Shown here: piece by piece, positions 9,001 through 60,381 of the stretch
Layout of the letters: each line of letters opens with the position of its first letter
Position numbering within the stretch: the first letter of the stretch is position 1
Assembly: GCA_900088475.1 (NCBI GenBank)
Contig: FLMG01003853.1
Location: 1-64,000, forward strand
DNA: 64,000 bases
Source of the DNA: Hyphochytrium catenoides
Lineage: Eukaryota; Protista; Hyphochytriomycota
Reading direction: 5' to 3'
Notes under the pieces: model-generated
Told to the model about the DNA's origin: nothing
The model's input: only the letters and a program-made list of their open reading frames with translations
Databases searched by the model: none
Program-made: the position numbers and the translations under genes

Positions 9001-12000
9001 TCAAGAGAACCTCCAGTGCCGTCTCTGCCTAAACTGCGGCCCGCTGAAATCTTAACGGAACCTCCAGGACCTTCTCTGCCAGCTCCGACATTGATTATGA
9101 TGGACCCTGCCTGTCCCAGGTTGGACTCCCCGGACGACAGATGTAGAGATCCACTCCCAGCGGCAGTTAGACTGCTAGACGAGCGCAAGACAACGTCGCC
9201 AGTACCAGCGCCTTCACCTGTCTCCAGTACTAGTTTCCCACTCCTATCGCCTCTTGAGAGTCCACTTGCAATTTTAATCGAGCCGCTGCTAGATGAGGCA
9301 CTTTGTCCGCTGATCAACTCCAGTAGCCCGCCTGACGCCCTTGCTGATCCAGCTGACAACAGAATGCTCCCAGGGTTCATCTGAGTGGCAGAACCTGCAA
9401 CGATGTGGACGGATCCACCCTGGGAGAGACTACCGCCAGCTTGTACTAAGACATCGCCAGTTTGTCCTTTGAAGGAATGTCCTGTGAGCAAAGCTAGATC
9501 TCCACTGCGGCCTGCATCCGTAACCGAACCGGTAGANNNNNNNNNNNNNNNNNNNNNNNNNNNNNNNNNNNNNNNNNNNNNNNNNNNNNNNNNNNNNNNN
9601 NNNGCCTGCATGGGACGACGCTAGGCTAGCAGAAGCCAATGCTCCTCCTTGGATTTTTACGCCACCAGCCAGTCCGTCTCCGACGACAGTCCCGGCTTTT
9701 AAAGTGATAGCACCGCCGGCAGACTGGCTCGTCTTAACGGACTCCACGATTCCTGCCGCAATAATGATACGGCCACTTTCGCTGGAAGAGCTGGAGCCGG
9801 ACGATAGAATGACATCACCTGAGGCTCCTTGAATGGCATCCCCGGAACTTAGAGTTGCAGAGCCCGACGAACCCTTTGAGGATTGTCCAGTAGCAAGCAA
9901 TATGGCCCCTGATGACCCCTCTGCAGCGTGCCCACTGAGAAGAGTCATAAGACCAGAGTTTTTTTGGTAGGACAGACCAGTTGATAGCAGCACCGAGCCG
10001 CTACGGTCCTGGCTGTTTCTGCTAAAAATCATGAGATTCCCGCTGCCCTCCTCCCCTTCTCCGCTAGAGATTTTGGCTGAACCTCCTCTATCACCGTGGC
10101 TTCCGCCGGCAGCCAGACTGAGAGACCCACCAGCTCCCCTGGTTTTGCTGGTGGCTGTTCCAGCTTGAATAGTCACGGCTCCTCCTGCCCCGCCATTGAC
10201 GGACGCATTGCCTGCGAGAATTTCCACCAGCCCACCGGCTTCTGTATGAGACAAAGAGTCCCATATCTTCATGCTAATCTTGCCTGTTGTAGCTCCACTA
10301 CCAACCTCAAGAAGCAAGCTGCCACTCCCTCCTTGAACCATGCCATTGGGAGCTGAAGTTTGGATGCGAATGTCCCCGGTGACATTGCCGCCAGAACCAG
10401 AGAGCAGCTGTATGTCTCCACTCAAACGCTCTCCTGGCGATGTCTGCAGCATGATACTGCCGCTATTCGCTGACTGACTAGCCCCGCTGATAAGGACAAT
10501 ATCTCCACCTGATGACGCTTCAGAGCTTCCCGATGACAGCTTCAAGTGCCCGCCGGGACCGGAACCAACACCTTCCATTGAGCCGGCTCTTATGTCAACG
10601 GGTGCTCCTGGGCCACTATCCCCGGTTCCACTTCCCGCTACAAGACTAAGTCTGCCACCATGTGCATGTAAGGACGAACCAGTTGCAACGACTATATCGC
10701 CACTAGGTCCATGAATGGAGTAGCCGCTCATAAAGTTAAGGTTACCACTACTGCCATCTACGGATGAAGAGGCGATTGTGACGTTTCCACTGCTACTAGT
10801 CACAGGTCCACCCCCTGTGGTCAAAGCCTTTGTTGCACCACCGGATTTAATACGTATAGAACCGCCCACGGAGTTCACTCCTCCTGCACCGCCGGATAGC
10901 TCAACACTACCACCTCTTGATGTTGTCTGGATTGAAGACGTCAAGGCAGAACCACCGCTTAGACTGATGCCGCCGCCATTACCCTTATCCGCTCTGGAGG
11001 TGATCGAGCCAGCAGCCAGGCTGATTGCCCCACCCGTGGCGTTGTCACCAACGGCAGAGCCTACTTCCAGTCTGATGGAACCTGCACTCTGGTACCCGGA
11101 CCCTGACGACAGTACGATCCCACCGGATGGACCTTTCCTTGCCGCTCCCGTGCCAACTATGGCAGAGCCCGAAGTGAAACCCGAAGAAGCACTTGCAAAA
11201 ATAACCGAGCCAGAAATACTGTTGGAGGAGCCAGAGAGAAGTCTCACGTTTCCAGAGGGTCCTAATTCGGAGTGGTTCTCCCCAGAGGACATAGTGAGAG
11301 AGCCAGTTGGACCATTGCTAGTTCTACTCTGGGCACTGTTGATCACCACGCGACCGGTCTCGTTGTCGCCTTGCAAGGTGCTGCCACTCACAAGTTGTAA
11401 TGTACCGCCTGTTTTCATGTTGCTATTGCCAGCTACAACTTTTATGGCCCCTCCTGCACCTGTGTCACTGGAACCTGCACTCAAGACTAGAGAGCCACCT
11501 GCATTATTGTACGTGGATCCGCCTTCAACCCTTATCGAACCCCCAAATTGATCGGTTGTAGCGGACGTCCCGGCTCGGATGCTGATTGGGCCTGCACTAC
11601 CAGACGGTGAATCTCCTGTCGTAAACTGAAGGTGTCCTGAATGGCTTGGTAAGGAGGTGCTGCTGGAGGCAACGGCAGAGCCGATGGTGACGTTGCCGGT
11701 AGCAATCCCAGAACCTGAGGTAAGCATTAACCCTCCACTAAGCCCAGATCTTGCTGTTCCGCTGGATATTGTGACCTTCCCACTACTATTTTCACTGTTT
11801 CCGCTTAAGAGCTCGACCGTACCTCCCGGTGAAGACCCGGAGGCGCCAGAGACAAGCTGGAGGGCACCGCCCTCTCCGGCTTCAGGGCCAAACATGTCAC
11901 CCGCTTTAATGGAGACTGATCCTCCCTGAGCAATTCCTTCCCCTTGTCCGGATGAAATCCAAATGTCTCCTCCAGATCCCTTCTTAGCCGACCGGCCTGT

Positions 12001-15000
12001 CTGAATGAAGATTTCACCAGTATCCCCAGAGGGTACAGAGGCAGTGGAAAAGGTCATCTTCCCTCCACCACCCATTTGCGACTTTGAGGTTGCGACAGTC
12101 ACATCACCAGAGCTCCCCCGCTCGCTTGAACCGGACAGAAGCACAACTGAACCCGCTTTGCCGCTGCCACGACTATTTCCGCCTTCTAGATTGACATTTC
12201 CCGCTTCTCCCATTAGAGCTCCGGGTGATAGAATTGAGCCTGCCTTGAAATAAAGAGCACCACCAGATCCGGTACTGGTCTGCACAGAACCGGCTGACAC
12301 CATAATCGCTCCACCATGTTCACCCGTGCTTGTGCCAGCTTGAAGGGATATATTCCCTGTGGAAGTGGAGCTGTCATCACCAGTGGAGAACAGGAGAGAA
12401 CCAGAGTCACCTCGGACACCTTTACCGGTCCCAATGACGATAGAGCCAGACTCACCGCCAGAAGATGCGGTTAGGAGGGTGAGAGACCCTGACCTAGAAC
12501 GGGGTAATCCTGTCTTTATGCTGATGTCACCGGACTCTCCCTGCGATGCCGTACCAGAAAATATACTTACGGAGCCGCTATTCTTTCCTCCTCGAGCACT
12601 TCCAACGACGATGGACCCGCTTTTGCCATCAGGTGCACCACCGCTCTTTACTTCGAGTGATCCACCATCTTTGAACCGAGTAGCCCCACCTTCAATGCTA
12701 ACGCTTCCTCCGTTCCCGCCCTCACTGCTCTGCGAGGAGCCCGCCAGAAGACGAATGCTGCCTGCTCCGTCTCCTCCCTTGCCGGTGGTACTACCGGCTA
12801 CCAGAGAAACGTCACCCGCTTCAAATCCGCCTGACGACCCCACTCTAAGAGAAATCCCACCTGTGGTGCCAGCGGTAGCGTTACCCGTCTCCATCATAAC
12901 CATCCCAGTGTTACCATTTGTAGAAGCAGCTGATTGTATGAAAATTCTACCCGTACTGAACCCGGTACCGGACTGCAGGTGCAGGTCGCCAGAAAAACCC
13001 GTACGCGCTCTACCAGTTGAAAGTGTTACGGATCCTGTCGAAGAGACCTCAGCGTGCCCACTGGTTAAGCTAATTTGTCCACTACCAGAAGCAGAAGAAG
13101 TTCCGGACATAACTTTAACGGCCCCGCCTATGCCAGAATTGGGTCCTAACATAGATCCTGCTTCAATCTTAACGTACCCTCCCTCGGTTTGACCTAGTCC
13201 GACTCCAGATCCTAAGAGAATGTTGCCAGCTTTAGAAGCCGCGCTGCCTGTCTGTAGAACGATGCTCCCCGTGGAGCTGGAAGCTGATGATCCCGTAGAA
13301 AGAGTAACAGTCCCACTGCCACCAGCACCGTCCTTGGTGTCTGAAGATGCTAATGTGACATGTCCCGCACTCGTGCCAGGAAGTATGGCAGCGCCCGACT
13401 TAATCATGACAGATCCACCGGGACCGGCGGTGCTAAACCCAGCTTGGAACCTCAGGTTGCCACCTTTCACGGCGCTAGAAGCCGGAAGCAGTGCTGACCC
13501 GGCGGTGAGCTCAATATCCCCTCCGCTGCCCCCTCCTTTGCTGGAACCAGCGGACAACACGATTTTCCCGCCGGGAGACGATGTCTCTTTTCCAGCCCCC
13601 CAGCCACCCTTTAAGCTTATAGCGCCGCTGTAGGTACCTCCAGAGCCTGAGGAGATCGAAACAGATCCCGAGTATCCTTCAGAGGAGTTACCCGTTCCGA
13701 TGACAACTTGACCAGAGAGTCCTCTAGAAGCTGAACTTTGAAACATGACCGAACCCGAATGTCCTCCAGTAGCCTTCCCGCTGGCGACAATGATGGCGCC
13801 AGAGGTCGCATCTCCCAATTTGGAATCTGATACGTCGCCCGAGGAGAGAACTACAGAACCAGTTTTCCCAGCCGTACTGCTAGCGGTGGCTAGGAGCAGT
13901 TGTCCTGTGGATACCGTTTGACTACCTCCACTCAGTATTTCTATTGAACCACCAGGGCCACCTTTCGCTTCACCGGCTAAGAGACGAATATGCCCTCCCC
14001 TAGAAGACTTATTGCTATCATGGTCTACTGCAGAACCAGCCATTAGATGAATAGAACCAGCGATGGCTTCCCTACCGGACCCTCCACCTGATTTGATGGT
14101 CACTGACCCTCCACCACCATGGCCTCCTAGTCCACCTTCCACTGATATGGACCCTGCTTGACCCGAAGCTGAATCACCAGACTTGACTAAGACTGATCCA
14201 GACGTTCCTTCACTTGCAGGCGAGGACTGCATCGAAATGTTTCCCGTCTGGAAAGAGGCGACCCCAGTAAAAACCTCAATGTTACCGCTCTCAGTTCCAG
14301 TCGTACTTCCCGTGCCAATGCTAATATCTCCACTCTTGTGAGACGCACTAACCCCTGTCTTTAGCTCTATTTCTCCCCCAACGGATGAGGTAGAAGAACC
14401 AGAAGTGAGTTGGATTCTTCCGGCAGAAGCTTCACGGACCGATCCAGCTAAAATAACTACAGAACCTCCAAAGGCGTCATTTCCTGAGCCCGCTGAAAGG
14501 GCAATCCTGCCGCTGACACGGCTGTTGCCGGTAGCGATATTAACGCTGCCGCTACGCCCTGAGCTGGCACTACCACTGGAAAGCACAACGTTACCGCTGC
14601 TTCCTTTGTCCAGCGCACTTGATGACCCAAGAGCAAGACTACCTGTATGGCCTTCTCTTACGGAGCCAGAACGGATGAGTATGGCACCTGAGGTGCCAGA
14701 AATTGCATCACCCGACATAATAGACACCCTGCCTCCATGGGAGAGCGGACCAGTTGCGGGGGGACGTGCAAGTACCGAACCGGCCCTCAGTGTCACAGCG
14801 CCGCCATTACCCGCGGCGCCAATAGAACCAGCCGAGAGCATGACGGCACCTCCAGAAAGACCGCCCATGGCTTGTGTGACAGGAAATATCCCTCCGACGC
14901 CTATCTTCACAGACCCAGCTTCCCCAGAGGAGGAGGAGCCGGAGGAGAGTGACAGCGATCCAGCAGATCCGTCTGCCGCAGATCCTGTTTTAAGGAACAC

Positions 15001-18000
15001 AGACCCAGATGACTTGCTGCCATCCTGGCTCTCCACAGTAATCCTGCCGCTACTTCCAGAGAGAGATCTGCCGGTAGAGACCAAGAGGCTTCCCGACGTT
15101 GAAGAAGCTGCGCCTGTTTCGACCTGCACCATACCAGACCGGTATATTGACTGTTTAGGATGATCCGCGGTCTTGAGAACCATATCTCCACTCTTCCGCC
15201 CTCCGTAGCCAGTCCCCAACATGATTGACCCTCCTAAGTCTTGTTGGCTAGAACCCGCATTAAGACGAATACTTCCGCCTGATCTGCTTGTAGAGGCACC
15301 TCCAACCACGGCAAGGTTTCCACCAGGACTATCCTGAGCTGATCCAGCCAGAACCTCAATCGCCCCACCTTTCCCTCCTTGGCTAATAGCTCTCCCAGCA
15401 GCTATAGTTACAGACCCGGCAAGGCCCGCTTGTGTGGACCCTGAGCTAAGGTGGACTGAACCTGAGGCAGCCAGATCAGCTACATCTGATGTCCGCAAGA
15501 ATAGATCTCCTGATCCACCGCCCAAGGTAGAAGATGATTCAATATTGATGTCTCCACTTCTCTTCTGTCTGGATGCTCCAGACCGGATTGCAACATGACC
15601 ACCACGTGCGGTTGTCGAGTACCCACTGGCGAGGAAAAGATTACCGCCTAAGCCTTCAGTGGTGGCGCCAGCAGAGATTGACACCTCTGCACCGTCTCTC
15701 TGACTTTGGCTTAGAATGGAGCCAGCTACCACTGAGATCCGTCCTGGCGAGGAGCCGTCCGCGGTTGCAATGCTGATGATCCCTCCTCTCACGGACGAAG
15801 GCCCAGTGCTTATTTGGATTGCGCCAGAGCTCCCAGTAGAACTTGCACCAGTAAATAGCGAGAGCTGGCCACTATTGCCTAAGGCTCCTGCTGCCGCTGT
15901 ATTGACCACGATAGAGCCACTATGCCGATCTGCGGCCGCGCCCGAGCTAATTTCTACTTCACCTCCATCTCGAACGCCCCTACCAGCCTGGATGACAAGC
16001 CTTGATTGCCCAGTGGGCGCATTAATGTCTGGCGTCTCTCGTGCATCACCAGTCCGAATGTATACATTACCGGGTAGGGTGGCCGCTCCAGATGACAGAG
16101 TAACGTCTCCTCCTACACCCATAGCTGCTTCGCCAGCGGCAATTACTATGCTGCCGGATGATTGGTTGGGAAGGGAAGAGGCCCCAGAAAGAACGCGGAT
16201 GGAGCCAGATTCCCCTCTCTTGACTGAAGAAGTATGTATATGAATTCCCCCACTCTTGCCGCTTTCCGCTAGGTTGCTCTTTAGAAAAATGTCCCCGCTT
16301 TCTGCACCTTCTCCACTAGAAAGCAGCAGTTTACCTCCCTTACCACTCCTCCTGTTAGTATGGCCTCCTGCAACTATTTGAGCATCTCCTCCTAGCCCTA
16401 CATCACCGGATGACGCTCCTGCTTTCAAAGTAAGTTTGCCCCCGGCAGCTGCTATTGCCTCAGATCTCGATGATCCAGCAGAAACCGTCACACTCCCTCC
16501 TTCCTCATTGACCCCGGATCCTGCAAGCAAGGAGATCGTTCCCCCTCTCTGGTCTCTTAGGCTTGTGCCAGCCTTAAGGTCAATGCTACCCGGCAGGCCC
16601 AAAGCCGTATCTCCAGTATGGAGTTGTATGGAGCCACTCACCCGGTTATCGGCGGCATTGGCAGTTGAAAGAAGAAGCTGGGCACCAGGTCGCTCCTGTG
16701 AGCCACCGGATTGAATCCGAACCTGGCCAGACACTTTGTCTCCACCCGAACCACTGCGAAGCTCTAAATCTCCCGCTCTTGCAGCTCCTTCGGTAGAGTT
16801 ACCGGCATGAAGGAAAAGGGAGCCTCCCCAGGCGTTGTCACCCGTGCCATTGCCTGCTACAAGAAGAATCGAACCAGCAGCATGGGTAGAGGTTGATCCT
16901 GTATGTAGCTTGAGAAATCCTGACATGCTCTCTTTCCCCTCTCCGGTAGTAAGCTCAAGGCTGCCAGACTTTCCATTTGCTAAGCCTGTTCCCACCCTAA
17001 CAGATCCAGAATCCGCCCGTGCAGAAGAATGAGTATGCACCGAAACATCTCCTGTTGTACCTTCAGGGCTACGAGCAGAGCCTGATGATACTATCACACT
17101 ACCCCCCAATGCATTGCCCTTGCCGGCGGCCATGACAAGGGAACCACCTTCCTGTCCTTGGGCCGTTGTTGTTGTTCCCAAAAGGCTTCCAGCTTGAATG
17201 ACCATGTCCCCTGCCTTGCCACCCTGCATGCTGTCTCCTGACCTGAGGTACATTCTTGACCCATCGGTCGACATACTGGTTCCAGATGAAAGGACCACTT
17301 CTCCTGAGCTGACTTCTGAGCGACCAGTGGTTAGGGCGATGCCGCCAGATACTCCACCCTGTCTATTGGTAGTGTTAATTAAGACCTGACCGGTCGATCC
17401 AGATGTGAAGTTGCTCGCGGTGGTTACTATAAGATCCCCGGTAGCCTTGGGCCCGGTTCCTGCTGCTAAAGTAACCGATCCTCCCCTGCCAGATTCAGCG
17501 CTACCACCAGTAATTGATATCAAGCCACCGGACCCCTCGTCTACAGAGATCAGACTACCTGCTGTAAGGTTGATGTCTGCACCGGTTGCCAGGGCTTCTT
17601 TGGTAGTACGAATGTGGCTAACCCCTGCTTGGACCGAGATGCTTCCTGCCCTTGAATAATGAGAGCTGCCTGTCATCAGAGACAAGCTACCGGACGTTTC
17701 GGATGAGGCATCCCCGCTCGTAATAAGAACATTGCCACTTGGTGAACTGCCACCAGTAGAAGAGGACACAGTCAGCATTCCAGCACTACGATCAAGGATA
17801 TTCCCCTGACCAGAAGCGATGATAACTTTGCCGCCCTTTGCACCTAGTCCTGCCTTGAGAGCTATAGACCCGGAGGCACCACCAGCACTATTTCCAGTCC
17901 TGATCTCTACTTGCCCTGTGCTCCATGAAGAAGCTCCTTCGGCATTAGAGGTCCTTAGGATGATACTAGAACCCACGGGAGCTGCACCACTTTGCAACAT

Positions 18001-21000
18001 GATCGCTCCTCCTTCCTGCAAGGTAGCATTTCCGGTTGATAACTCTAGTGAACCGCTCCGGCCTGACGCTCCATACCCTGTTTGAAGTTGTATACCTCCA
18101 CTTTCAGTACTAGAGTCAGGGGATGATATGCGTAAGAGTCCAGAATAAGGTCCGCTTCCAGACATGAGGCTGACGGCTCCTCCAAACGTTCCTTCACCTG
18201 CCGCCATTTGGAGATTTCCACCAGATAGTTCTTCGTTTTGACTTCGGCCTTCCAGCGAGTATGCTCTACCTGCCATAATAGATATCGAGCCACCTTTTCC
18301 TGGACCAGTTTCTAAGATACTGATTATGCCGCCGGCAGTCTCCTCACTAGTATCAATGCTGCTGCTACCGCCTTTAATGACAAGAGCACCAGCCAGACTC
18401 CGAGCAGAGTCACCTGTCGCTATCGTAACAGATCCAGAAGCGTCAGACACCGAATTTCCACTCCGCAGTGTCATGGAACCCGAAGGGCTTTCTAGTTGTC
18501 CGAGTTCTGACGTGGCCGTTTCGAGGAGAATACCACCACTTTGCCCTTGGTGCCCCTTTCCCGATCGAAGTAACACCTCTCCTCCTCGTTTTCCACCACC
18601 AGCTTGTACTAGAACTCCACCTCCGGCTGCAGTTCCAGCTGTGGTGCCCGCCTCCAGAAGTATATTGGATGCTACGCCTACTTCAGCAATGCTGCCTTGA
18701 AGCATTATATCTCCTGACTTAAGATTCCCCGAGCCAGGTTGGAGCTTAATATTGCCTGATGCTCCGTTGACTGACAGCCCTGACGCTATGAGTAGGTCCC
18801 CAGTTCCGGAAGCCCCGGCAACCCCGTCACGGCTTCGCAGTTCAAGGACACCTGTCACACCTTGAGCACTCCCTCCCGTAATAATTTGTACCGCACCTCC
18901 ACTCATTCGTCCTCCGGAAGCTCCAGCCCTCAGACTGATCCCAGCTGCGGCTGAAGTTTTGGAAATAGACTGACCGGCTGCAATGGTGATAGCTCCTGCC
19001 TGCCTCAAGCTTGGACCCGTAGACATTGAGAGGCTCCCAGATTCACCTTGGGGAACATATCCCGTTGCAATTTTAATGGCCCCACTCTTCACCGTTGAAG
19101 TTGCGGAGGTGACAGCTTCCACTATAAGGCCCGTTTGGAGAGTTAGATCTCCTGTTCTTAGCTCATCGGCCCCTCCTGTTGCGGTAGAAACAAGGATGGA
19201 TCCGGTTGCTGTCTCGCCCGCTCCTGAAGCCAGTCGCAAATCTCCACCCTGCATTTTTTTACTTTGACCGCCCGTAATAAAGACGGTAGACCCGATGTCA
19301 CCGAAAGAAGTCCCCGCCTCAACATAAACTGAGCCTGCAGAGGCGGCCGATCCTGACCTTAGCGTGAGTTGGCCAGAACTAGAAGTCACTGATGACCCTG
19401 TGGTAAGCTGAATACCACCACCAGAGGACGTTGTAGAGGCTCCACTAAAGAGGATTAAGTCTCCACCCTCAGTTTCCTCAGATGAACCTGCGGCCAGATT
19501 GAGGCTACCGGCGGTGCCGGTTTCTGTTCCTCCAGCTTGAAGTTCGACTGAACCTGCAATTGCTGACTGCGAATAACCAGCCTCAAACTTTACTTCTCCG
19601 CTTTGTCCACTCTTAGACTTTCCAGTGGATATGTGGACCCTGCCGGTGTCGGCAAGGGAAGACGCAGCTTGACCACTACTAATGAAAATGCCCCCACCCT
19701 CCCTTCCTCTGGAGCTGCTAGTGCTCGAGGCGGCTGTGGATAAGTGCAAGCTTCCACTGCCTTGAACACCGCCTTGACCACTCGCTACTGTGACGTTACC
19801 ACCAGTGGATGACTCAGAGGACCCTGCAGTGATCTCCACGCTTCCCGCGTTTCCAGAACTGGTGGATCCCGAGGCGACTCTGACAGAGCCGGAGTCAGAT
19901 TGTCCTTTGCCACTTGTCAGCTCTATATTTCCTGATTTACTGGCTTGGCCCGTGGAAATCCTAACCCGACCTGAGTCTACTTTGGACGATGAAGAGCCAA
20001 GCAATACTTGGCCGGTGACATTCCTTGCACTGGCACCTGAAAGTATTGAAATATCTCCTCCTGCAACCTCTGAGTGATTTCCAGCGGAAAGAAAGATGCC
20101 TCCAGAGACGGTTCTAGCAGACCTGGCTTCACCAACCTGAATAGTAATATCGCCCCCCTTGTCTCCGGCGCTGTCACCGCTGGACAGTTTGATAGAGCCT
20201 GCAGATTGGCTCGAAGCGCTTGACCCAGTTGTAATGTGAACTGAACCTGAGCCTCCTCTTGACGAAGGAGAAGTCAATAGTTGAATACTTCCCGTTTTCT
20301 GATTAAGGGACTTTCCACCACGAAGAATTACTTCGCCTCCGATTCCCTTAATCGAATCGCCTCCATGCATCATTAGATTGCCCCCGGCGGCTGTAGCCTC
20401 ATTGGCATTAGCTCCTCCGCTTACTGTAAGTCGCCCGCCAGCTTCAGCTGAACCAGCCCCGCCTATCACCTCAACATCCCCACCTGTCAGACCTGCACCG
20501 CCTTGAATCGCCACTGAGCCACCCTTATTGCGAAGAGAAGAACCACCATATAGTCGCACTCCACCGCTAGCAAGGGTTTCACTATACCCTGCGCTCAGGT
20601 GGATTGTTCCTGATGCAATAGTGGCAGACCCTGTTGCGAAAGTGACATTCCCAGAGCTCCCTCCCGTACTTGGGCTTGTACCAAGCAGGACGGAACCTGT
20701 GCTTCCGGTATCTTGAGAGGCAGCAGTCAACAATGTCAGTGAACCAGAACGACTACCACTCCCTGTGTAGAGGGCGACATCACCACCAACGCTGGCTCCT
20801 TGTCCACCCGAGAGAAGAACCATACCGCCATCTCCCTTTCTACTTAGCCCTGCAGAAAGGATTACTCCTCCTCCGCTGCTCGTTACCGATAACGATTCAG
20901 ACTCCCCACCTGATATGACCGTCATGGCAGCACCGCCATCTACCGTGCTGGCTCCTGCAGATAGTCTTACCTCACCACCTTTGCCTTTGCTCGACGATCC

Positions 21001-24000
21001 GCTCGTTAGCTTTAATGAACCTCCGGTGGCAGACACTGAATTTCCAGCTCTAATACTGACGTTTGAACCTGCAGCAAAGCTATCACCAGACTCAACAAGA
21101 ATGAAGCCCGATTGAGCCTTATCGCTGCTGCTGGTGCTTAGGGTGATACTGCCCGTCAGCCCCACAGAACTTTTCCCTGTGTTCATTGTCAAGCTACCGC
21201 TCGAAGCAGTCTGAGAACTGCCAGAAAAGAGCAGTAGATCACCAGAGTTATCTATTGCGCCTCCCGTAGACAGCTGTAAAAAGCCAGACGAGCCCTTTAC
21301 AGCAGTACCAGTACCGATTTTGACATCCCCAGACAACCCAGATCGTACATCTCCAGAATGCAGACCTACACCTCCACTCTCCATTGCCGAGCCTCCCCCT
21401 GTCATTAGCAGCATCTTTCCAGTCTGTTTGGACTCAGATCTGGCAGTCTGAATGACGACTGAGCCTCCAGGTCCGTCAAGACTAGCGCCGCCGCTAACAA
21501 ATATCATGCCACCGGCCTTCTCTCGCTGGAATGCATCAGCACCCATGATCTCTATAGGAGCAGGACCTCCCAATCCGCTGGTTCCAGGCTGAAGAGAGAT
21601 TTTACCGGCTTTGTTCGAGGATGAGCCTGAAGCCAAAATGATGCTGCCGCTGCTAGTTAAAGCTGTCCCCGAAACCAGTTTAATCCGTCCGCTTTTGTCG
21701 CCATCTTTGGACGATACAAGAATGTCCCCTGTGAGAGTGTTAGAACCTTTTCCCACCGAAAACCTTGCGAAGTGTGCCTGGAAGGAGGCGAGTATATCCA
21801 CCACCAGGGCTTGGCTGTCAAGCTCATGCAGATCCTTGATAGGGCTGGTGCTGCCGGGCATGGCAAAGATACTCTTCTTTACGTACTCTGGAAAGGTTTT
21901 CGCGACTTCTTGGCCGACAAGACCACGTCTAGGTGCTGTCCCTTCACCCAACATAGTCTCCCATTCCTCAGTATATGCTAAGTCATGCACCTCTAGGGTC
22001 TGTAACCTTTGAAGGAGATTTTCCTTATCTACGCTTTCAATCGTAGTAAGCATTCTTTCGTCTGATGGAAGACCAATACGCGGCACAAGCAGCGGCACGC
22101 TGCTGATCAATTTTTCTTCGTTCATCTCCAAAGCAGATTTACGGTCGAGACTGCCCGATACCGACCAGCTGATTCCTGCTTTTGAAGATAGCTGGATGTT
22201 CCCCTCGGATGTCATAATTGCCTGCGCTGTGGGGCTTCCCGCCGCGTTAAGGATAACAGATCCGTCTGCTCTGGTTACTAAAAGGGGCTTGACATCAGTG
22301 GCGAACGACGGCAAGATGCTGAACTCTCCTCCTTTGCCTGAAGCGCTGGTCGAGCCTAGTGCAACGCGGACCGACCCTGCCTCTTGATCACTGCCACCTG
22401 CGCTCACCGTGAGGTTGCCTCCCACTGTACTCCCCGATCCAGCTGTGAGTGAGACTGAGCCTCCAACGCCACCTACTGAAGTCCCTGCAGCGAGGATAAG
22501 ATCTCCGCCAGGTTCACCGGGTGCGTGGGAAATACCCGCGGAAAGCTTCGCAGAGCCACCTTTCCCTGCCCCATCACCAACGGAAAGGGTCAAGTTCCCA
22601 CTTTGACTCTTACCTCTCTCGTTCGTGGACCAAACCGGACCGCTGCTGATAAAGATGCTTCCGGAGGTCTGTTCCTCGGCGACGGATCCCGAACGGAGAG
22701 CAATAGCACCACTACCCTCCTTGTTCTTACCAGCTGCCTGAGTTTGTAACTCAAGGGCTCCATCTGATGCAGATACCATATCAGACCGGTGTCCAGCAGT
22801 CACAAGGATGCGTCCCTCAGGGCTCACAAGAGAAATATCTCCACTTTGGTCTGAGGCTGATCCTGTGATTAGTCGGATGGACCCTGATGTGCTGCCGGAA
22901 GCATCACCTGTCTCTATCAGTACGCCTCCAGATACCGAATCCTCAACAAGAGCATGTGAGGTAGACAGTTGAATCATGCCACTCACTTTCTCACCCTGTC
23001 CTGATGTAAGCGCCACTGAGCCGGCCTGAGAGATCTTGCTTTTACTCATAGAGGAACCTCCGGTGATGCTGACATTGGCACCACTGCCTGTTGCGAGAGA
23101 GCTACCTCCTACAATCTTTATAGCGCCAGCTGGACTAGATGTAGAAGTGGAGTTGCCGCTAGCGATAAGGACACGACCAGAAGCACCGCTTGAGCTTCCT
23201 GACACAATTGATATGCCTCCGGAAGCCCCAACCCCTGGCACAATGCTTGAGGCAGAGGACAAGAGAATAGCACCACTATAAGCTCCCGAACCACTGGTCA
23301 CCCTAACGGCTCCACCTCGTCCTAGAGGAGTTATGGAGTCTCCTGCGTTCAAATCCAGACCTGCCCCGCTTGCATCCTGCTCTACTGCGGATGAAGATCC
23401 TGCTGATAAAATAACGCGACCGGCGGTTCCAGCGGTGGACGACCCCGATCCAATGATGATATCCCCAGTACCTCCAGTCTTACTTGACCCAGAGCTCATC
23501 GTCATTCGTCCACTGCGAGAGCCTGATGCCAGCACTGAAGCGGAAGTCAGATATACGTCCCCTGACTGCAAGTTGCCCATGCCGGAGGAAAACGAAAGTT
23601 GACCTCCTCTCGCAGTATTAGATTCCCCGGCATAGATTTCAACATTTGCACCGTCACCATTTCCAAAAGAAGAACCGCCTTTAATAGAAATGTTGCCAGA
23701 TGATTGTCTGCTTGAACCTGAGGTCAGCTCAATGGCTCCCGAGACGCCAGTTGAGGAGTCACCAGTGTGTAGAGAGATTGTACCTGAGCCAGAGCTTGCT
23801 ATAGAAGGAGTACGGATAATGACGTTCCCGCTCCGTTGCTGCCCTGACGCACCAGACTCAAATAACAATACTCCCCCTCTCCCACTTGAAGAAAACCCAG
23901 CTGATAAGTTGATCGCACCAGCGCTAAAAGCCCCGGCGGAACTGCCTCCCATAATGTTTATAGCTCCTGCTCCTCCAAGATCGGAGCGTCCTGATCTTAA

Positions 24001-27000
24001 CGTTAGTGGACCAGTTGATCCAGCCACGGATGAGCCCGTCTCCAATCGTAACTGACCGCTCACGCCTTTCTTGACATCCGAGGTAGCCAATATGGCAGCG
24101 CCGCTCGAGGCCTCAACCGCTGCTCCAGAAACCATTGTCAGGTTTCCACCATCAGCAGCAGTTGAGCCACCTGCCATAATGTTCACAGAACCACCGTGCG
24201 AATTTTCAGCCTTTCCTTGGCTTGACCCTGCTGTGAGTTTAATTGCCCCACCGACGCCCGAGTGACCCCTATAATCTCCTGCAGCGAGAAAGACGGCCCC
24301 TCCGTAGCTATTGTCAAAGGTGGTGCTGCCAGCTGTCAAACTGATGGTAGACCCATTGAAATTTCTCCTCATTAGTCCGGCGCTGTCAGCGTCAGTTCCG
24401 CTAGAGGCACCACCTGTTAGTACTATATCGCCCGATCTTCCCGCAGAGTTTTCACCGGAGCTTATTTGCACCATCCCGGTACTCGAACTTGGATTTCTAG
24501 CAGCTCCGCTGGACAAAACAACACGTCCACTGAAGCCGAGGTCCGACTTAGCCGTTGTAAGGCGCAGAGCTCCACTGCCGCTGTTTGGTCCCCCTGCTCC
24601 AGTCTTGATAGTAATGTCAGCCCCACTAAAGCCATTAGTAGTCGTGGATCCTCCGGCTAAAGTGATCTTCCCTGGCCTTTGGCCCGAATTGCCAGTCCCT
24701 ATATTGAGGTCTCCAGATGGGCCCTTGTTTGCGCTGCCGGAAACGATGGTGATAGATCCAGTGCTGCCACTATGTGCTGAGCCGGTTGCAAGGGTGACAA
24801 AACCACTGTCTGCCGGGTTAGTAGAGGTAGGTGCTGTTGCAAGGGTGATAACACCAGTGCCACTGCGTTCACTTCTGCCACTGGAAATTTTGACACTACC
24901 ACCTGGAGAGCTGAGCGCTTTCCCGCCGTGGATGATGATTGAGCCACCCTCCTCTACTGGAAATCGCGAAGCGGAATCGCCGCCCAGAAGGCTGACATCT
25001 CCACCTTTTGCGGTGGAGCCCATTCCTCCTTGTATCTGGACCATTCCACCGGGCCCCTTTGCTGAATCACCTGCCTGCATATTTATGGCCCCTCCCAGAC
25101 CATTAGTTGCCACTCCGGCTAGAATGCTAACTGACCCTGACTTCGGTCCGTTAGAGGTTCCAGACGCAAGAACTAGGGGCCCACTTTCGTCCTTGAATGC
25201 AGGTCCCGTTCGTATGTGTATATATCCACTCCTACCAGTCCGTCCAGCTTCTGCAGTTTCGATTTGAATATCACCACTGGATGTTGCTTCACCCCTACCA
25301 GAGTGGAGGAATACGGAGCCACCAAAGCTTGCCTTAGAAAAACCGCCTTGGATGGTTACGTTGCCACCAATGTTAAGCGCCTTGTTTGCACCAAGTCCAT
25401 CTCCCCCTGACAGATGAAGTGACCCTCCTGAGCCACCGGCGGTTTCTGTGTTGGTGCCACTTCCGGGCTTTATTGCTACAGAACCTCCTCGCCCGTTTTG
25501 TGATCTCGAGTCTCCTGCCATGATACGGATAGCACCTCCGAGACTAGTAGTCCCTTGGCCCACTGCCAAGGATATGTCCCCTCCATGTCCGCCAAGAGCA
25601 GGTCCAGTCTGAAAGTCCAAAGCACCACTGTTCCCAGCAGTTGTTGAACCTGTTTTGAGTAAAATAATACCACTTTCTCCCCGCCTTCCTGCGTCCTGGG
25701 TATGAAGAAGCAGGTCGCCACTGGAGGTCGCAGAAGAAAAGCCCGTGCGGATGGCTACCCTTCCACCAAACGCATCATCAGATGTAGTTCCTGCCTCAAG
25801 AGAAATAGCTCCACCTACACCTGCATTTCCGTCCCCTACCTTAAGGTCAATGTTGCCTCCTCTGCCTCTGCTGGCTCGTCCTGTCCTGATAGTTACGGGG
25901 CCGCTATGTCCGCTTGTGGAGTTACCCGAAAAAAGCTCAATACCCCCGCTCACACCTGATCGCCCTGCATTAGCGGTTCCCAACACTAAATCTCCGCTAG
26001 AGGAGTCAGCACCAAAGCCCGTCAAGAGCTCAATGTAACCACCCGTGCTCCGACGCGACCAGCCACCGTTTATCACGACGTTACCACCTACGTCAATCCT
26101 TTCGTTGCCGCCCTGAGCTGCACCGGCAATCATGGAGATGGACCCGCCATTACCGCCATCGGCGTAGTAGGTACTGGTACCCTCTCCGGCTGCGATGACG
26201 ACATCACCCCCTTTCTGCTGCTTCTCACTCGTGTGTCCAGCTTGAAGAGCGATATCGCCGCCATCACCCTTCCTACCGGTACCAACGTGGATAGATATTC
26301 CACCACCAGCTCCTTCATAAGCTGCACCCGACAACATAGAGATGGTGCCGGAGTCTCCTTTTGTGGCGGTTCCTGTGATGATAGATACAGCGCCACTGAC
26401 CCCTCCTTCTCCTGATGATGCTGTAGCGAAAGTTATGTCACCGCTGGAAGTCTGGGTACTATGTCCTGATAGCAATTTTATGGAACCTCCTTTGGCTACA
26501 TCTGTTGTGGATCCTGCCGTTATTGAGACCGAGCCACCATCACCAAGGCTGCCACCTCCCACCAAGACAGATATTCCTCCACCTGCTCCACCACTAGACT
26601 CACCGGTCTCGATTCTGAGGTTGCCGGAGTCACCAAGCGCTGCGCTGCCCGATGCTAGTGTGACGCTGCCACTAGCTCCATGCTGGCCTGAGTCGGCCGA
26701 TGAAAATTTAATAGATCCACTGGAAGCCAGGGCAGAGGATCCTGAACTGATTCTGACTGAGCCACTGGACCCCAACCTGGCTCGTCCTCCTTCTATGTGC
26801 ACTTCCCCACCGCTGTCAAAGCGGCTTTCTCCTTCGGCGACACCACCTGTAATTTTGACGTTGCCGCCATTTCCGCCATCTACAGAATTCTGGCTCAAAC
26901 CATCACCTCCACTAATGCTTACCAAACCCCCCATTTTCCCGGCTGACAGAGTATTGCCAGCCTTTATAGCCAGTACACCACCATTTCCATAGTCACCAGT

Positions 27001-30000
27001 CCCCACCTCAACCTGTATTTTGCCACCCGAGCCATCCCCTGATGTCCCTGTAGTCATCCGTATGCCACCACTCGTACCATGCTGGGACTTGCCGGTCGCA
27101 ACATCAATTCGACCACTAGCGCCGTTCATGCCCGGTTCTCCTGTGGTGACGGCTATTGATCCGCTGAGACCCTCAGCGCTGTCACCAGACGCCAAAAGCA
27201 CACTGCCACCGACGCCTGTTGCAGCAGAGCCAGCCTTCAAGGTCAGCTTGCCACCAAGATCACGAAAAGAGTTGCCAGCACTAGAGCCTGCAACAACGAG
27301 GACATCACCACCATCTCCGCCATTCTCATTATCTGTATTAACCCCTTGGCCTGCTGATAAGTAAATAGCTCCCCCTTTCGAGGCTGCACCTTGAGCAGCA
27401 CCAGGTACGAGCAAGATACCTCCAGCATCACCATTGACGCTCTCCCCAGTCGCAAGTACAACTTGTCCACTCGGACCCGCAATAGCATCTCCGGTTTTCA
27501 GCCGCACCTCTCCTGTGTGTGTTGTGGAAGAGGAGCCAGTGGCCATAAAAATGTCACCGCTTTGCCCAAAGCTCCCCGCGTCATCTGTTACCACTCTCAC
27601 GGCTCCTGAGGATTCATCTGTTGAACGCCCAGAGCTGAGTACAATATCTCCACCTCTTGAGGTCCGGGAAAATCCGGCACTCAGTAAGACAGAGCCGGCG
27701 TAAGGGTTACCCTCTCCAGCCCGGAGGTAGATGTTTCCTCCGCTTCCGTTATCTGAAGTAGGAACGGTGGATCCTGCTTGGAGAATTATTGCGCCACCCC
27801 AACCCGTGCCTAGGCTATCTGAAGATCCTCCCGTGATGGAGACCTCTCCCCCTCCATTTTGTTGGGACTTTCCAGCCACCAGAGCAACATCTCCTCCCGT
27901 CTGACTGGCATCGCCTACCAAGAGTTTAATCGATCCTGACGCTGCACTTTCGGTTCTACCTGTACCGACGGTAACAGCACCAGAACTCCCATTTGACGAA
28001 TCACCAGTCTTCAGGTCCAAAGTGCCAGACCCTCCGGCTGTTAATATTCCTGACGTGGCAGTACCTAAAAAGATGGCCCCAGAGGTGGCTCCTCGACTTG
28101 ATCCAGACCTTAATGTGATTTTCCCTCCAACCTCAGTCCCTGCATGACCGCCCTCTAATAGCAACAGACCGACTTCACCAGACTTGAAAGAGCTACCGGT
28201 GGACAGAATAATGCTACCGGAGACTCCCTTCTCAGTAATCCCTGTGGCAAAACGGAGGTCCCCACTCTGGGCAGCCTCTGTGCTGCCTGTTCCCAAGATA
28301 ATCGCCCCAGTCATTCCACCAGAAGCCTCGTAGGTTGTGAGCCTTATATCCCCGCTGGATGTGGGGCCTGCGCCGCTTCGTAGAGTCATGTGTCCTCCCC
28401 TTCCTAGATTGGAAGACCCCCCGATCAGAACAAGCTCGCCTCCAGTTCCGTTTGGATCGTTGGCGTTACCACTAGCGAGGGTAAGAATACCACCTGCTAA
28501 CAACCCCGATCCAGCAATAATGGAAATTTCGCCACCGGAGCCTTCACGCTGACGTGAGGAGCCCGACAGAAATTGGAGACCTCCGGCTTTGTGACTGGCT
28601 TCACCTGCCGAGATCAGTACGCTTCCACTATCACCCTTGAGCGCCGGACCCGTGGAAAGGAGGAGGTCTCCCGAACTTCCCGCTTGTGCCTTGCCACTGG
28701 CAAGATAAATAGGCCCACTATCCGCCCCCTCAGGGCCAGTGCCACCCCCGGCAGAGGTTATTGAAACTGGTCCAGAGGAGCGTCCATTGTCAGCACCCTT
28801 CCCAGAGGATATTGAAAGGATACCTCCATCGCTTACAGCTGAGTTACCAGCCGAAAGGAGCAGTTTGCCCGCCACATCGGCATGGCTGGTTCCCACCGTC
28901 AGCTCAATGTCCCCGGCAGAGCCACCCTCAAGCGCAGAACCCGTTCTAAGGGTTATTGCGCCACTTCCACCAAAATGGGATAGGCCTGTTTGGAGCTCGA
29001 TGCTACCACTTTGACCATCTATTCCTGGTGATGCAGTTCTCAGCCCTAATTTGCCACTTGATTGTGTGCCACTACCGCCACTTTCAAGTTCAAGGCTTCC
29101 CCCGACCCCCTGTGAAGAGGAGCCGCCCATCAGGGTGACAGTTCCTCCCACTCCGTCAACAGCCTTTCCTGCCTTGAGAGTAATGCTGCCTCCGTCTCCC
29201 AAGTTCGACGTGGCAGCGATGCTGCCTGCAGCAGTGCCAGAACCGTCCCCTGCAGCGATGATCACCGATCCACCGCTACCACCCTGGGGATTGGGGTTAC
29301 TGCCAGCCAGCAAGGAAATCTGTCTGCCAGGGCGATGAGGTGCTACGTCGTCCGAGGCGCGAAGGAGCACATCTTTTGCTGATCTTACTGCAAATCCGTC
29401 CCTGTCGCTCTTCATTTCAAAGCTTACGGATCCTGCCATCCCTTTACGTAGAAAAGAAGGACAAGTTAGATACTGTCAGCCGAGGGGCAGATGAGGGCCA
29501 AACCTTCTTGAACAAGTTCACCTCCCTCACCAAAAGCAGGATCGGGTGTGATACGAATCTTCCCTGTGATGTCCCGTACTGAAGAGAAAGTTGAAAGAAA
29601 AAGCAATGTTAGACCTATCCTATCCTTCTAACTCTCCCGAAACTACTGGTAAGGGGTGCATCAATTTGAAATACCTTCTAGGAAGGAGGTAGGACAGGGG
29701 CCGTCAAACACAAGGCCATCGCAGTCGGAAGAGTAAGCAGCGCTGATAGTGAGGCAAGACTTGGAAGTGGCACACCAAGCGCAGTCCTCAGCCGTAGCGC
29801 ACGTATCGCATGAAGAGTACTGGCTACAGTCGGGAATGACTAATGACAGATGCCCTTGAAGTTAGATATCTGCTCCGGCAACCGCTTGCCACTCAGCATC
29901 GGGAGGATACTTACCTGGACACTGGTTTGCCCCATAAAACCACTCTGCACAAGGACTTCCTGTATTTTCTGGTCCTTCCACGGTTCCTTGCATGCAGGTT

Positions 30001-30297
30001 AGAGTTGAGTGACAAAATCCGCAGCCGGGTGTCGCAAGACAAGGTATGCATGCCTTTACGTCTTGCCTGAAAATAATTAGGAATACGGCAAAAAGTGAAG
30101 TCAATCCATGACCAAACCACAATGGGTATTTTTTTTTGATCTGACCAGTAGTCCCCGTTAGACGTAGCACTGTTTAAGAGCTCGCATGTGACAGATTTAT
30201 TGGAGCCAGAGCTGGACTGTGATGCTGCAGGGAAAGTTAGAACGAATGCCTGCAAAGAGAGGAGCGCTGAAGCGCTCAGGCTTAACGAGGGCCACAT
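1..30297 (-). CDS. Giant secreted fibre-like protein (>= ~10,000 aa, 3'-partial): signal peptide, 2x PSI domain, Gly/Ser beta-repeat arm, internal Peptidase S74/ICA domain, second Gly/Ser beta-repeat arm
   Basis: Hand-spliced exons 30297-30146, 30066-29915, 29839-29675, 29578-29504 and 29441-<1, all with GT..AG introns in consistent phase. They give MWPSLSLSASALLSLQAFVLTFPAASQ...DYW|QDVKACIPC...NQCP|VIPDCSQY...SFLE|VRDITGK...VQE|GMAGSVSFEMK, joining the 6669-aa ORF. Below the N gap (9537-9603) the same repeat continues in the neighbouring frame (STGSVTDAGRSGDLALLTG...) and is still open at base 3 (...SGVMQLVTAGVQDREGIS). The ORF track lists no stop-terminated ORF in that frame. Confidence 0.9.
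9537..9603. other. Assembly gap (67 N) inside the giant exon
   Basis: Run of N. The coding frame differs by one base across it, so the true length is probably a multiple of 3. Confidence 0.98.
21760..22068 (-). other. Peptidase S74 / intramolecular chaperone auto-processing (ICA) domain, MYRF-like, embedded in the giant protein
   Basis: PSDERMLTTIESVDKENLLQRLQTLEVHDLAYTEEW...RRGLVGQEVAKTFPEYVK...IKDLHELDSQALVVDILASFQAH follows the S74 pattern SDxRxK..I..v.....L..l..l....y.Y....G.iAQEV...fPeaV plus a terminal helix. The Ser codon is at 22063-22065 and the Lys position is Leu (22048-22050). Confidence 0.85.
29694..30186 (-). other. Two tandem PSI (plexin-semaphorin-integrin)-type Cys-rich domains at the N-terminus of the giant protein
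   Basis: C...CIPCLATPGCGFCHSTLTCMQG...CAEWFYGANQC and CSQYSSCDTCATAEDCAWCATSKSC...CDGLVFDGPC match the PSI pattern CxxxxsCxxCxxxxxCxWCxxxxxC...C...C. Confidence 0.85.
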
Positions 30298-60357: not shown

Positions 60358-60381
60358 NNNNNNNNNNNNNNNNNNNNNNNN
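60358..60381. other. Assembly gap (24 N)
   Basis: Run of N. Confidence 0.98.

What the first reader, a model, noticed from the sequence alone, without database searches (positions are those of the whole stretch)
21760..22068. Mid-chain MYRF-like ICA domain lacking its catalytic lysine: a probable non-cleaving trimerisation knot
The Ser-Lys dyad motif SDxRxK reads SDERML here. The Lys position is CTT (Leu), so it is not a one-base error. The rest of the domain follows the MYRF-type ICA closely. In phage fibres the ICA is C-terminal and cleaves itself off. Here it sits at about residue 2,640 with more than 7,000 repeat residues after it, and repeats resume right after a short helix. Inferred: it was retained as a permanent folding nucleus registering two beta-helical arms, i.e. 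a pseudo-protease.
Basis: partly seen in the sequence, partly recalled or inferred. Interest (0 to 1): 0.85.

Follow-up and report, generated by a model that had tools for sequence, protein, structure and literature searches.

The report
Dead self-cutting domain in giant fibre
A giant secreted fibre protein (over 9,800 residues) of a soil protist carries, a quarter of the way along, one phage-tail-fibre/MYRF-type self-cutting folding domain that has lost its catalytic lysine, so it most likely no longer cuts and serves as a permanent three-chain joint.

Summary
Window 21760-22068 encodes residues 2458-2560 of one open reading frame of more than 9,800 codons (29439 down to 3, interrupted only by a 67-N gap).

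This is the only non-repeat island in that chain, and it is a genuine ICA / Peptidase_S74 domain:
- A profile of 74 relatives hits the MYRF ICA crystal structure at E=8e-22.
- The AlphaFold model (pLDDT 85.7) superposes on it at 2.0 A.

The motif reads P|SDERML. The Leu (CTT) sits exactly where MYRF has K592, and two independent DNA data sets agree. The domain has also lost the equivalents of MYRF Y615 and K671, but it keeps the residues that define the fold.

- The domain belongs to an undescribed stramenopile family (oomycetes, a brown alga, this protist) of Gly/Ser-repeat fibre proteins.
- In this family an ICA in mid-chain, with repeats resuming after it, is the norm.
- About three quarters of the domains keep the Ser-Lys pair; about a quarter have lost it, more than once.
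- In two relatives a dyad-dead ICA evolves under stronger constraint (dN/dS 0.17) than its flanking arms (0.29-0.34).

A non-cleaving structural joint is therefore the best reading. Cleavage and trimerisation remain untested. The scan has noted this gene and similar giant genes before.

The parts
30190..30297 (-). Probable first exon: ATG at 30297 followed by a hydrophobic, signal-peptide-like stretch (MWPSLSLSASALLSLQAFVLTFPAAS)
   Evidence: Read directly from the frame-2 translation; not scored with a signal-peptide predictor. Same start as given in earlier notes s1-331098 and s1-352531.
29901..30062 (-). PSI (plexin repeat)-like Cys-rich exon 1
   Evidence: Pfam PF01437, E=0.01, 16.6 bits, below the gathering score.
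29664..29861 (-). PSI (plexin repeat) exon 2
   Evidence: Pfam PF01437, E=1.2e-5, 26 bits, above the gathering score of 23.1.
22300..29439 (-). N-terminal arm: about 2,380 residues of Gly/Ser-rich repeats with a 15-residue basic period
   Evidence: ORF, sequence, autocorrelation peak at lag 15. No Pfam family. Nearest atlas clusters are from Oomycota and Bacillariophyta. The model of the top-ranked atlas hit (not the query's own model, and not shown to be a relative) resembles phage S74 fibre proteins and gp5_C.
22069..22299 (-). Conserved beta-strand 'stalk' leading into the ICA (ORF residues 2381-2457)
   Evidence: Aligned in many relatives; seven short strands in the AlphaFold model.
21760..22068 (-). 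ICA / Peptidase_S74 domain (ORF residues 2458-2560), from the P|S site to the end of the C-terminal helix
22048..22065 (-). Dyad motif SDERML: Ser2459 kept (TCA, 22063-22065); Leu2464 (CTT, 22048-22050) in place of the catalytic Lys
   Evidence: unchanged in two DNA runs.
21979..21981 (-). Leu2487 at the position of MYRF Y615, which is Tyr in 95% of dyad-intact relatives
   Evidence: mapping from the alignment; role of Y615 from PMC8326128.
21814..21816 (-). Ser2542 at the position of MYRF K671, which is Lys in 92% of dyad-intact relatives
21766..21816 (-). C-terminal helix of the ICA (17 residues), equivalent to the start of the MYRF trimerising coiled coil
   Evidence: AlphaFold H158-174; aligned with the 7dc3 helix.
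9604..21759 (-). C-terminal arm, part 1: about 4,050 residues of the same 15-residue repeat
9537..9603 (.). Run of 67 N. It shifts the frame by one base, which creates the apparent stop at 9430-9432
3..9536 (-). C-terminal arm, part 2: 3,178 more repeat residues, open to the edge of the window, so the gene continues beyond it

Best explanation
The domain is a true homologue of the intramolecular chaperone auto-cleavage (ICA, Peptidase_S74) domain of phage tail fibres and of MYRF. It is embedded once in a secreted protein of at least 9,800 residues, built as follows: signal peptide, two PSI repeats, a beta-repeat arm of about 2,400 residues, the ICA, then a beta-repeat arm of at least 7,300 residues.

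It has lost the general-base Lys of the Ser-Lys dyad (Leu2464) and two further residues of the cleavage centre. It keeps the residues that define the fold.

Most likely (inferred) three chains still assemble through this domain in the secretory pathway. Its 'donut' and C-terminal helix would nucleate and register the three-chain beta-helical arms, as in phage fibres. The P|S bond would not be cut, so the PSI-headed N-arm stays covalently joined to the long C-arm: a permanent joint rather than a release site.

In the wider family the same domain appears to act as a switchable joint. Relatives with an intact dyad would be cut there; relatives with a dead dyad would not.
For: Homology (shown):
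- Family profile against the MYRF ICA 7dc3, E=8.2e-22, followed by phage fibre ICAs 6f45, 3gud, 8jov and 8hqz.
- 69 of 74 family members hit PF13884.
- AlphaFold with the alignment gives pLDDT 85.7. The top Foldseek PDB hits are all ICAs: 7dc3 (TM 0.76, rmsd 2.0 A), 4uw8, 3gw6, 3gud. AFDB hits are all S74 or MYRF-like.

Dyad loss (shown):
- Leu aligns with K592.
- It is confirmed in two DNA runs.

Consequence (from the literature): MYRF K592A is not cleaved at all, and Y615A is strongly impaired (PMC8326128).

Pattern of substitutions in the query:
- Its only non-conservative departures from columns at least 90% conserved in dyad-intact relatives are K80L, Y103L, A125G and K158S.
- These correspond to MYRF K592, Y615, A638 and K671, all at or beside the reaction centre.
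- D76, R78, W109, R121, G122, P133 and D164 are kept.
- The domain scores 180 bits against the family HMM.

Family context:
- 26 of 109 aligned domains lack Ser and/or Lys.
- On the best tree this needs 11 changes, at least 2 of them forced by well-supported branches.
- In two related assemblies an orthologous dead ICA (Ser to Asp or Ala) has dN/dS 0.17, against 0.29-0.34 in its flanking arms.

An uncleaved ICA can be a stable trimer: the 7dc3 crystal is the S587A mutant with three chains.
Against: - No experiment or proteomic data; no RNA run could be listed.
- Ser2459 and the preceding Pro are retained, so a residual or alternative-base cleavage cannot be excluded.
- Trimerisation is inferred from homology only; the model is a monomer.
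- The phylogenetically controlled test of co-loss had too few independent pairs to be informative.
- The C-terminus of the protein lies outside the window, so further ICAs, possibly live ones, may exist downstream.
- The two alleles differ by 4 synonymous and 4 non-synonymous listed changes inside the domain, too few to show constraint in this gene itself.
Confidence: 0.62

Rival explanations
1. The domain still cleaves at P|S, using another general base or an induced environment, or is cut there by another protease. The giant chain would then be processed into an N-arm and an ICA-headed C-arm, as expected for its dyad-intact relatives.
For: Ser2459, Pro2458, Asp and Arg of the PSDxR motif are all retained. 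Only one other family member, P0095, shows Ser kept with Lys lost, so this state is unusual. MYRF reaction-centre mutants generate alternative cleavage sites.
Against: K592A in MYRF abolishes cleavage completely, and no other basic residue lies near the centre except K671. The query has lost the K671 equivalent as well, and also the Y615 equivalent.
Confidence: 0.13
2. The domain is a decaying relic with no remaining role: a neutral spacer left over from an ancestral cleaving ICA.
For: Four reaction-centre positions are substituted. The allelic differences listed inside the domain are 4 synonymous to 4 non-synonymous.
Against: It scores 180 bits against the family HMM, keeps most invariant fold residues and folds confidently. 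Orthologous dead ICAs in relatives are under stronger purifying selection than the arms. The frame stays open in two haplotypes or strains.
Confidence: 0.1
3. The arms are single-chain solenoids rather than three-chain fibres. The ICA-like domain would then serve some other purpose, such as a hinge, a docking site, or lateral oligomerisation of separate fibres.
For: No multimer model or experiment is available. The repeat has no Pfam family. The structural likeness to gp5_C and S74 fibre proteins comes from an atlas neighbour's model, not from this protein.
Against: Every solved ICA is a trimer attached to a three-chain beta-helix or fibre (PMC8326128). A 15-residue period is short for a single-chain solenoid turn (my own inference).
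Confidence: 0.1
4. Artefact: an assembly or sequencing error, or an unrecognised intron that removes the region from the mRNA.
For: No RNA data could be obtained. The gene has introns at its 5' end and an N gap further on.
Against: The same 1.7-kb contig with the identical motif occurs in two independent DNA runs. The frame is open for 20 kb. The domain boundaries match those of more than 100 relatives.
Confidence: 0.03

Closest known systems
MYRF ICA domain (mouse/human myelin regulatory factor; PDB 7dc3; Pfam PF13884/PF13887)
   Same: Best sequence and fold match. The P|SDxR motif is in the same place. It is preceded by a beta stalk and followed by a trimerising helix. It is mid-chain, with more protein after it.
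   Different: MYRF has the K592 dyad and cleaves; here that position is Leu, and the Y615 and K671 equivalents are also lost. There is no NDT80 DNA-binding domain and no MYRF architecture. The host protein is a secreted giant repeat fibre with PSI domains. The helix is about 17 residues instead of about 36.
Phage C-terminal intramolecular chaperone domains: endosialidase K1F (3gw6), GA-1 neck appendage (3gud), T5 L-shaped tail fibre pb1 (4uw8/8hqz), S16 long tail fibre (6f45)
   Same: Same fold and motif family. The domain follows a long Gly-rich beta-repeat shaft. The model of an atlas neighbour of the repeat arm (not this protein's own model) resembles phage S74 fibre proteins and gp5_C.
   Different: In phages the domain is C-terminal and is removed after folding. 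Here it is internal, occurs once in more than 9,800 residues, has lost its Lys, and is followed by more than 7,300 further repeat residues.
Uncharacterised 'Peptidase S74 domain-containing proteins' of stramenopiles (Phytophthora infestans PITG_01491/XP_002908152.1, Aphanomyces astaci RLN75429.1, Achlya hypogyna OQR97563.1, Aphanomyces euteiches CAK4417441.1, Hapterophycus canaliculatus CAN0414515.1)
   Same: True family members at 30-40% identity over the whole stalk plus ICA. They have the same Gly/Ser repeats before and after the domain. Locus L001 has the same architecture of two PSI repeats, arm and ICA.
   Different: Most keep Ser-Lys (83 of 109 domains). Some genes carry two or three ICAs, the first live and the later ones dead. 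The query has a single ICA, in the rare state of Ser kept and Lys lost.

Membership tests
ICA / Peptidase_S74 (PF13884) domain superfamily | Significant sequence match to the family model | tested here: met
   Alone it scores 19-21 bits, just under the gathering score of 22. A profile of 74 relatives hits the MYRF ICA at E=8.2e-22 and phage ICAs at 1e-5 to 3e-3; 69 of 74 relatives pass PF13884 at E<=0.01.
ICA / Peptidase_S74 (PF13884) domain superfamily | ICA fold (beta 'donut' plus C-terminal helix) | tested here: met
   AlphaFold pLDDT 85.7. Foldseek PDB ranks 1-13 are all ICA structures, with 7dc3 at TM 0.76 and rmsd 2.0 A.
ICA / Peptidase_S74 (PF13884) domain superfamily | Nucleophile Ser at the scissile X|S bond | tested here: met
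   Ser2459 aligns with MYRF S587 and is preceded by Pro, as in MYRF.
ICA / Peptidase_S74 (PF13884) domain superfamily | General-base Lys five residues after the Ser | tested here: not met
   Leu2464 (CTT) at the K592 position, confirmed in two DNA runs.
ICA / Peptidase_S74 (PF13884) domain superfamily | Autocatalytic cleavage | not testable with these tools
   Predicted absent from K592A data in MYRF (PMC8326128); no proteomic or biochemical data.
ICA / Peptidase_S74 (PF13884) domain superfamily | Homotrimerisation downstream of a three-chain beta-helical shaft | not testable with these tools
   Only a monomer model could be made. Beta-strand stalk and repeats are present upstream. The likeness to gp5_C and S74 fibre models comes from an atlas neighbour's model, not this protein's.
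MYRF transcription factor family | NDT80-type DNA-binding domain before the ICA and a transmembrane segment after it | tested here: not met
   No Pfam family at all in about 9,800 residues outside the ICA. The flanks are Gly/Ser repeats. The head is a pair of PSI repeats.
Stramenopile Gly/Ser-repeat fibre proteins with internal ICAs (undescribed family defined here) | Conserved stalk plus ICA unit flanked on both sides by 15-residue Gly/Ser repeats | tested here: met
   116 relatives at E<=1e-3 and 67 at E<=1e-10; the same flanks; the same two-PSI head in L001.

The most novel reading that the evidence does not exclude
Stramenopiles (oomycetes, hyphochytrids, brown algae) share an undescribed class of giant secreted three-chain fibres built on phage tail-fibre principles. 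In this class internal ICA domains act as programmable joints. A live Ser-Lys dyad means 'fold the upstream arm, then cut it free'. A dead dyad means 'fold and stay joined'. The pattern of live and dead ICAs in one gene would then set the length and number of fibre segments produced from one precursor. The window's protein would be the extreme case: one dead joint holding together a sub-micron fibre. Such fibres could belong to a lineage-defining extracellular structure such as flagellar hairs or a cell coat, but nothing here tests that.
Probability: 0.3. Interest if true: 0.85.

Novelty: new variant of a known kind. Interest (0 to 1): 0.62.

Why it matters
ICA domains are known in two settings: as disposable C-terminal folding chaperones of phage fibres, and as the self-cutting switch of the animal and Dictyostelium transcription factor MYRF.

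This finding shows a third setting. It is a family of enormous secreted eukaryotic fibre proteins in which the domain sits inside the chain. In about a quarter of cases, including this one, the domain has given up proteolysis yet remains conserved.

That is a natural separation of the chaperone/trimerisation function from the protease function. It is directly testable with a small recombinant fragment.

It also points to an unstudied extracellular fibre system shared by oomycete pathogens, brown algae and their relatives, probably of phage or viral ancestry.

Tried and rejected
- Plus-strand reading of the given coordinates: full of stops. The feature is on the minus strand.
- Pfam on the whole giant protein in three pieces: nothing at E<=0.01. 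The S74 signal appears only when the domain is cut out.
- The search for homologous proteins for giant proteins carrying this domain: none.
- The search for homologous proteins with the C-terminal arm: it found relatives (P0124-P0126) but not the window's own protein, so the true C-terminus could not be recovered.
- Single-sequence AlphaFold: useless, pLDDT 33.
- Phylogenetically independent test of co-loss of Y103, A125 and K158 with the dyad: only one pair on well-supported branches, so uninformative. The raw counts are strongly associated but not independent.
- RNA evidence: no RNA run listed.
- Literature on stramenopile S74 fibres or a link to mastigonemes: nothing found.
- Assembly error as an explanation: rejected on two independent DNA runs.
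- The apparent stop at 9430: rejected as an artefact of the 67-N gap.
Full report
**Where and what**

The coordinates are right, but the feature is on the minus strand; the plus strand is full of stops. window:21700-22128:- reads ...LLVPRIGLPSDERMLTTIESVDKENLLQRLQTLEVHDLAYTEEWETMLGEGTAPRRGLVGQEVAKTFPEYVKKS...FQAHFARFSVGKGSNTLTGDILVSS.

It lies in an ORF running from 29439 down to 9433 (6,669 codons). The apparent stop there is an artefact. A run of 67 N at 9537-9603 shifts the frame by one base, and the repeat protein continues in the next frame from 9536 to the window edge at 3, a further 3,178 codons.

Upstream there are small exons:
- an ATG at 30297 followed by a signal-peptide-like stretch;
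- two PSI (plexin repeat) segments, PF01437: 26 bits (above the gathering score) at 29664-29861, and 16.6 bits at 29901-30062.

The protein is therefore secretory-pathway and at least about 10,000 residues long.

**Only island**

A composition scan shows that the only stretch in more than 9,800 residues that is not Gly/Ser/Ala/Thr-rich repeat is ORF residues about 2,381-2,565. A family HMM finds exactly one match in the six-frame translation of the window, at 180 bits. Both arms have the same 15-residue basic period.

**Is it an ICA?**

Alone, the domain scores 19-21 bits against PF13884, with full-length coverage but just under the gathering score of 22. Its best PDB sequence hit is the MYRF ICA 7dc3 at E=7.8e-4. 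That is suggestive but thin, so I looked for relatives.

An exhaustive phmmer search of 1.8 billion representative proteins gave 116 hits at E<=1e-3, 67 of them at E<=1e-10. From an alignment of 74 of these domains (A1):
- The profile hits MYRF ICA 7dc3 at E=8.2e-22, then phage S16 long tail fibre 6f45, GA-1 neck appendage 3gud, a tail fibre 8jov and T5 pb1 8hqz.
- 69 of 74 members hit PF13884 individually.
- AlphaFold with this alignment gives pLDDT 85.7 and pTM 0.69; without it, pLDDT was 33.
- Foldseek against PDB returns only ICA structures at the top: 7dc3 (TM 0.76, rmsd 2.0 A over 121 columns), 4uw8, 3gw6 and 3gud.
- The AlphaFold DB cluster search returns S74 and MYRF-like proteins.

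Homology to the ICA domain is therefore established.

**The lysine**

In both the pairwise and the family alignments, P-S-D-E-R-M-L lines up with MYRF P586-S587-D-L-R-A-K592. The codon is CTT at 22048-22050.

Two independent DNA runs of the organism (2017 and 2011) each cover 21660-23358 with one contig. The second differs at 23 positions (another allele or strain), but neither differs at the Ser or the Leu codon. The nearest change is Thr2466Ala.

**Beyond the lysine**

I compared the 83 dyad-intact domains with the 26 dyad-broken ones, column by column. Columns at least 90% conserved in intact members include S75, D76, R78, I79, K80, Y103, Y105, W109, R121, G122, I124, A125, Q126, P133, E134, F153, K158 and D164 (numbering of the 191-residue query).

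The query's only non-conservative departures are K80L, Y103L, A125G and K158S. Through the 7dc3 alignments these correspond to MYRF K592, Y615, A638 and K671.

According to the MYRF structure paper (PMC8326128):
- S587A and K592A abolish cleavage.
- Y615 and Y617 line the 'cutting hole', and Y615A is strongly impairing.
- I637 and Q639, which flank A638, contact the cleavage site.
- K671 is the only other basic residue near the centre, although K671A still cleaved.

The query has thus lost the base, the only nearby alternative base and a key aromatic, while keeping the fold-defining residues. The same positions are relaxed across the dyad-broken group:

| Position | Residue | Dyad-intact members | Dyad-broken members |
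|---|---|---|---|
| 103 | Y | 95% | 46% |
| 125 | A | 100% | 58% |
| 158 | K | 92% | 43% |

These counts are not phylogenetically independent. The independent-pairs test had too few pairs to decide.

**The family changes the picture**

The relatives are not phage proteins. Named members come from:
- oomycetes: Aphanomyces astaci, A. euteiches, Achlya hypogyna, Phytophthora infestans PITG_01491;
- a brown alga, Hapterophycus canaliculatus.

The rest are unnamed eukaryote-like contigs and metagenomic fragments. One is filed as a Methanosarcinales MAG 'tail fiber' protein, probably a mis-binned contig.

They carry the same Gly/Ser repeats before and after the ICA. Examples:
- P0125 (2,635 aa): a dyad-intact ICA at 494-656, then about 2,000 repeat residues.
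- P0001 (locus L001): three ICAs within 1,767 residues, reading SSDKRIK, TADERIK and PDDTRIK.
- P0002: two ICAs, SSDRRIK and AADSRIK.
- The L001 gene begins with the same two-PSI head as the window's gene.

A mid-chain ICA followed by more repeats is therefore the family norm, and most such ICAs look catalytically competent.

**Recurrent, conserved dead ICAs**

Of the 109 aligned domains, 26 lack Ser, Lys or both. On a maximum-likelihood tree with the dyad columns removed:
- The broken state needs 11 changes, and well-supported branches force at least 2.
- One clade of six has lost both residues (support 99).
- Another, containing the second and third ICAs of P0001 and P0002 plus P0048, has lost Ser only (support 95).
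- The query sits alone on its own branch in the rare state 'Ser kept, Lys lost'.

I also compared the orthologous dead ICA between two assemblies, L001 and L002, whose proteins are 77% identical. Nei-Gojobori dN/dS values were:

| Region | dN/dS |
|---|---|
| ICA core | 0.17 |
| Stalk plus ICA | 0.22 |
| Upstream arm | 0.34 |
| Downstream arm | 0.29 |

A dyad-dead ICA in this family is thus conserved more strongly than its surroundings. That argues for a retained non-proteolytic function. This was shown in relatives, not in the window's own gene.

**Mechanism**

Shown: domain identity, fold, loss of Lys and of neighbouring centre residues, family architecture, and purifying selection on dead ICAs in relatives.

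From the literature:
- The Ser-Lys dyad is indispensable.
- The ICA trimer forms through its C-terminal helices.
- The uncleaved S587A mutant crystallises as a trimer (PMC8326128; 7dc3 has three chains).

Inferred: three nascent chains associate through this domain. It nucleates and registers the three-chain beta structure of the upstream arm, as in phage fibres, and perhaps seeds the downstream arm through its helix. Because it cannot cut, the PSI-headed N-arm remains covalently attached to the C-arm of more than 7,300 residues.

The arms' likeness to phage fibres rests only on an atlas neighbour's model (TM 0.78 to phage S74 fibre proteins, gp5_C-like), so it is a lead.

**What remains open**

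- Whether any cleavage occurs.
- Whether the fibre is trimeric.
- What lies at the C-terminus, which is off the window and was not recoverable.
- Expression; no RNA run was listed.
- Which structure the fibre builds.

Searches of the paper library found nothing on stramenopile S74 fibre proteins and no link to mastigoneme proteins.

**Earlier notes**

Earlier notes of this scan had already flagged this gene and similar giant genes on other pieces of the genome. They name the organism as probably Hyphochytrium catenoides. I did not test the organism name.

**Verdict**

- Observation: confirmed.
- Interpretation: partly supported. The pseudo-protease joint is the best reading, but the mid-chain position is a family trait shared with apparently live ICAs.
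- Novelty: a new variant of a known kind of domain, inside a family that appears undescribed.

The three N runs (9537-9603, 45570-45630, 60358-60381) were not sent to any search.

Noticed in passing
window 9537-9603: A 67-N run inside the giant gene shifts the reading frame by one base. It creates a false stop at 9430-9432, so gene callers will split the gene here.
   Followed up: yes
L001:4900-18413 (GCA_024449685.1, JAANST010975565.1): A related giant gene with the same two-PSI head, an arm of about 1,900 residues, then three ICAs only 180-450 residues apart (SK live, then AK and DK dead), then more arm. The live-then-dead order is shared with P0002 from a second assembly (GCA_024449875.1).
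   Followed up: partly
P0028 (RYE85057.1): A 1,168-residue member of this eukaryotic fibre family is deposited as 'MAG: tail fiber domain-containing protein, partial [Methanosarcinales archaeon]' on a 3.5-kb contig. It is probably a mis-binned eukaryotic contig.
   Followed up: no
P0124 (MMETSP0034, organism name truncated in the tool output to 'Neph...'; TAXON_ID 156128): A 3,798-residue transcript with a signal peptide and the same kind of repeats (27% identity over 84% of the C-arm query) but no ICA match. It is either a wider distribution of the repeat or contamination of that transcriptome. The organism was not looked up.
   Followed up: no
window 19600-24400: The 2011 DNA run differs from the window at about 1.4% of positions in the 1.7-kb contig over the ICA (23 differences), and several repeat stretches appear as two contig variants. 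This suggests two haplotypes or strains, or collapsed repeats.
   Followed up: partly
window 21696-21846: A 2023 soil metagenome run holds a 151-base contig identical to part of the ICA region, so the organism or a very close relative occurs in that soil sample.
   Followed up: no
window 30001-64000: Base composition changes sharply at about 30000: GC 0.54 with GC skew about -0.15 inside the giant gene, against GC 0.46-0.50 and no skew outside. This reflects the strong codon and amino-acid bias of the Gly/Ser repeats.
   Followed up: no
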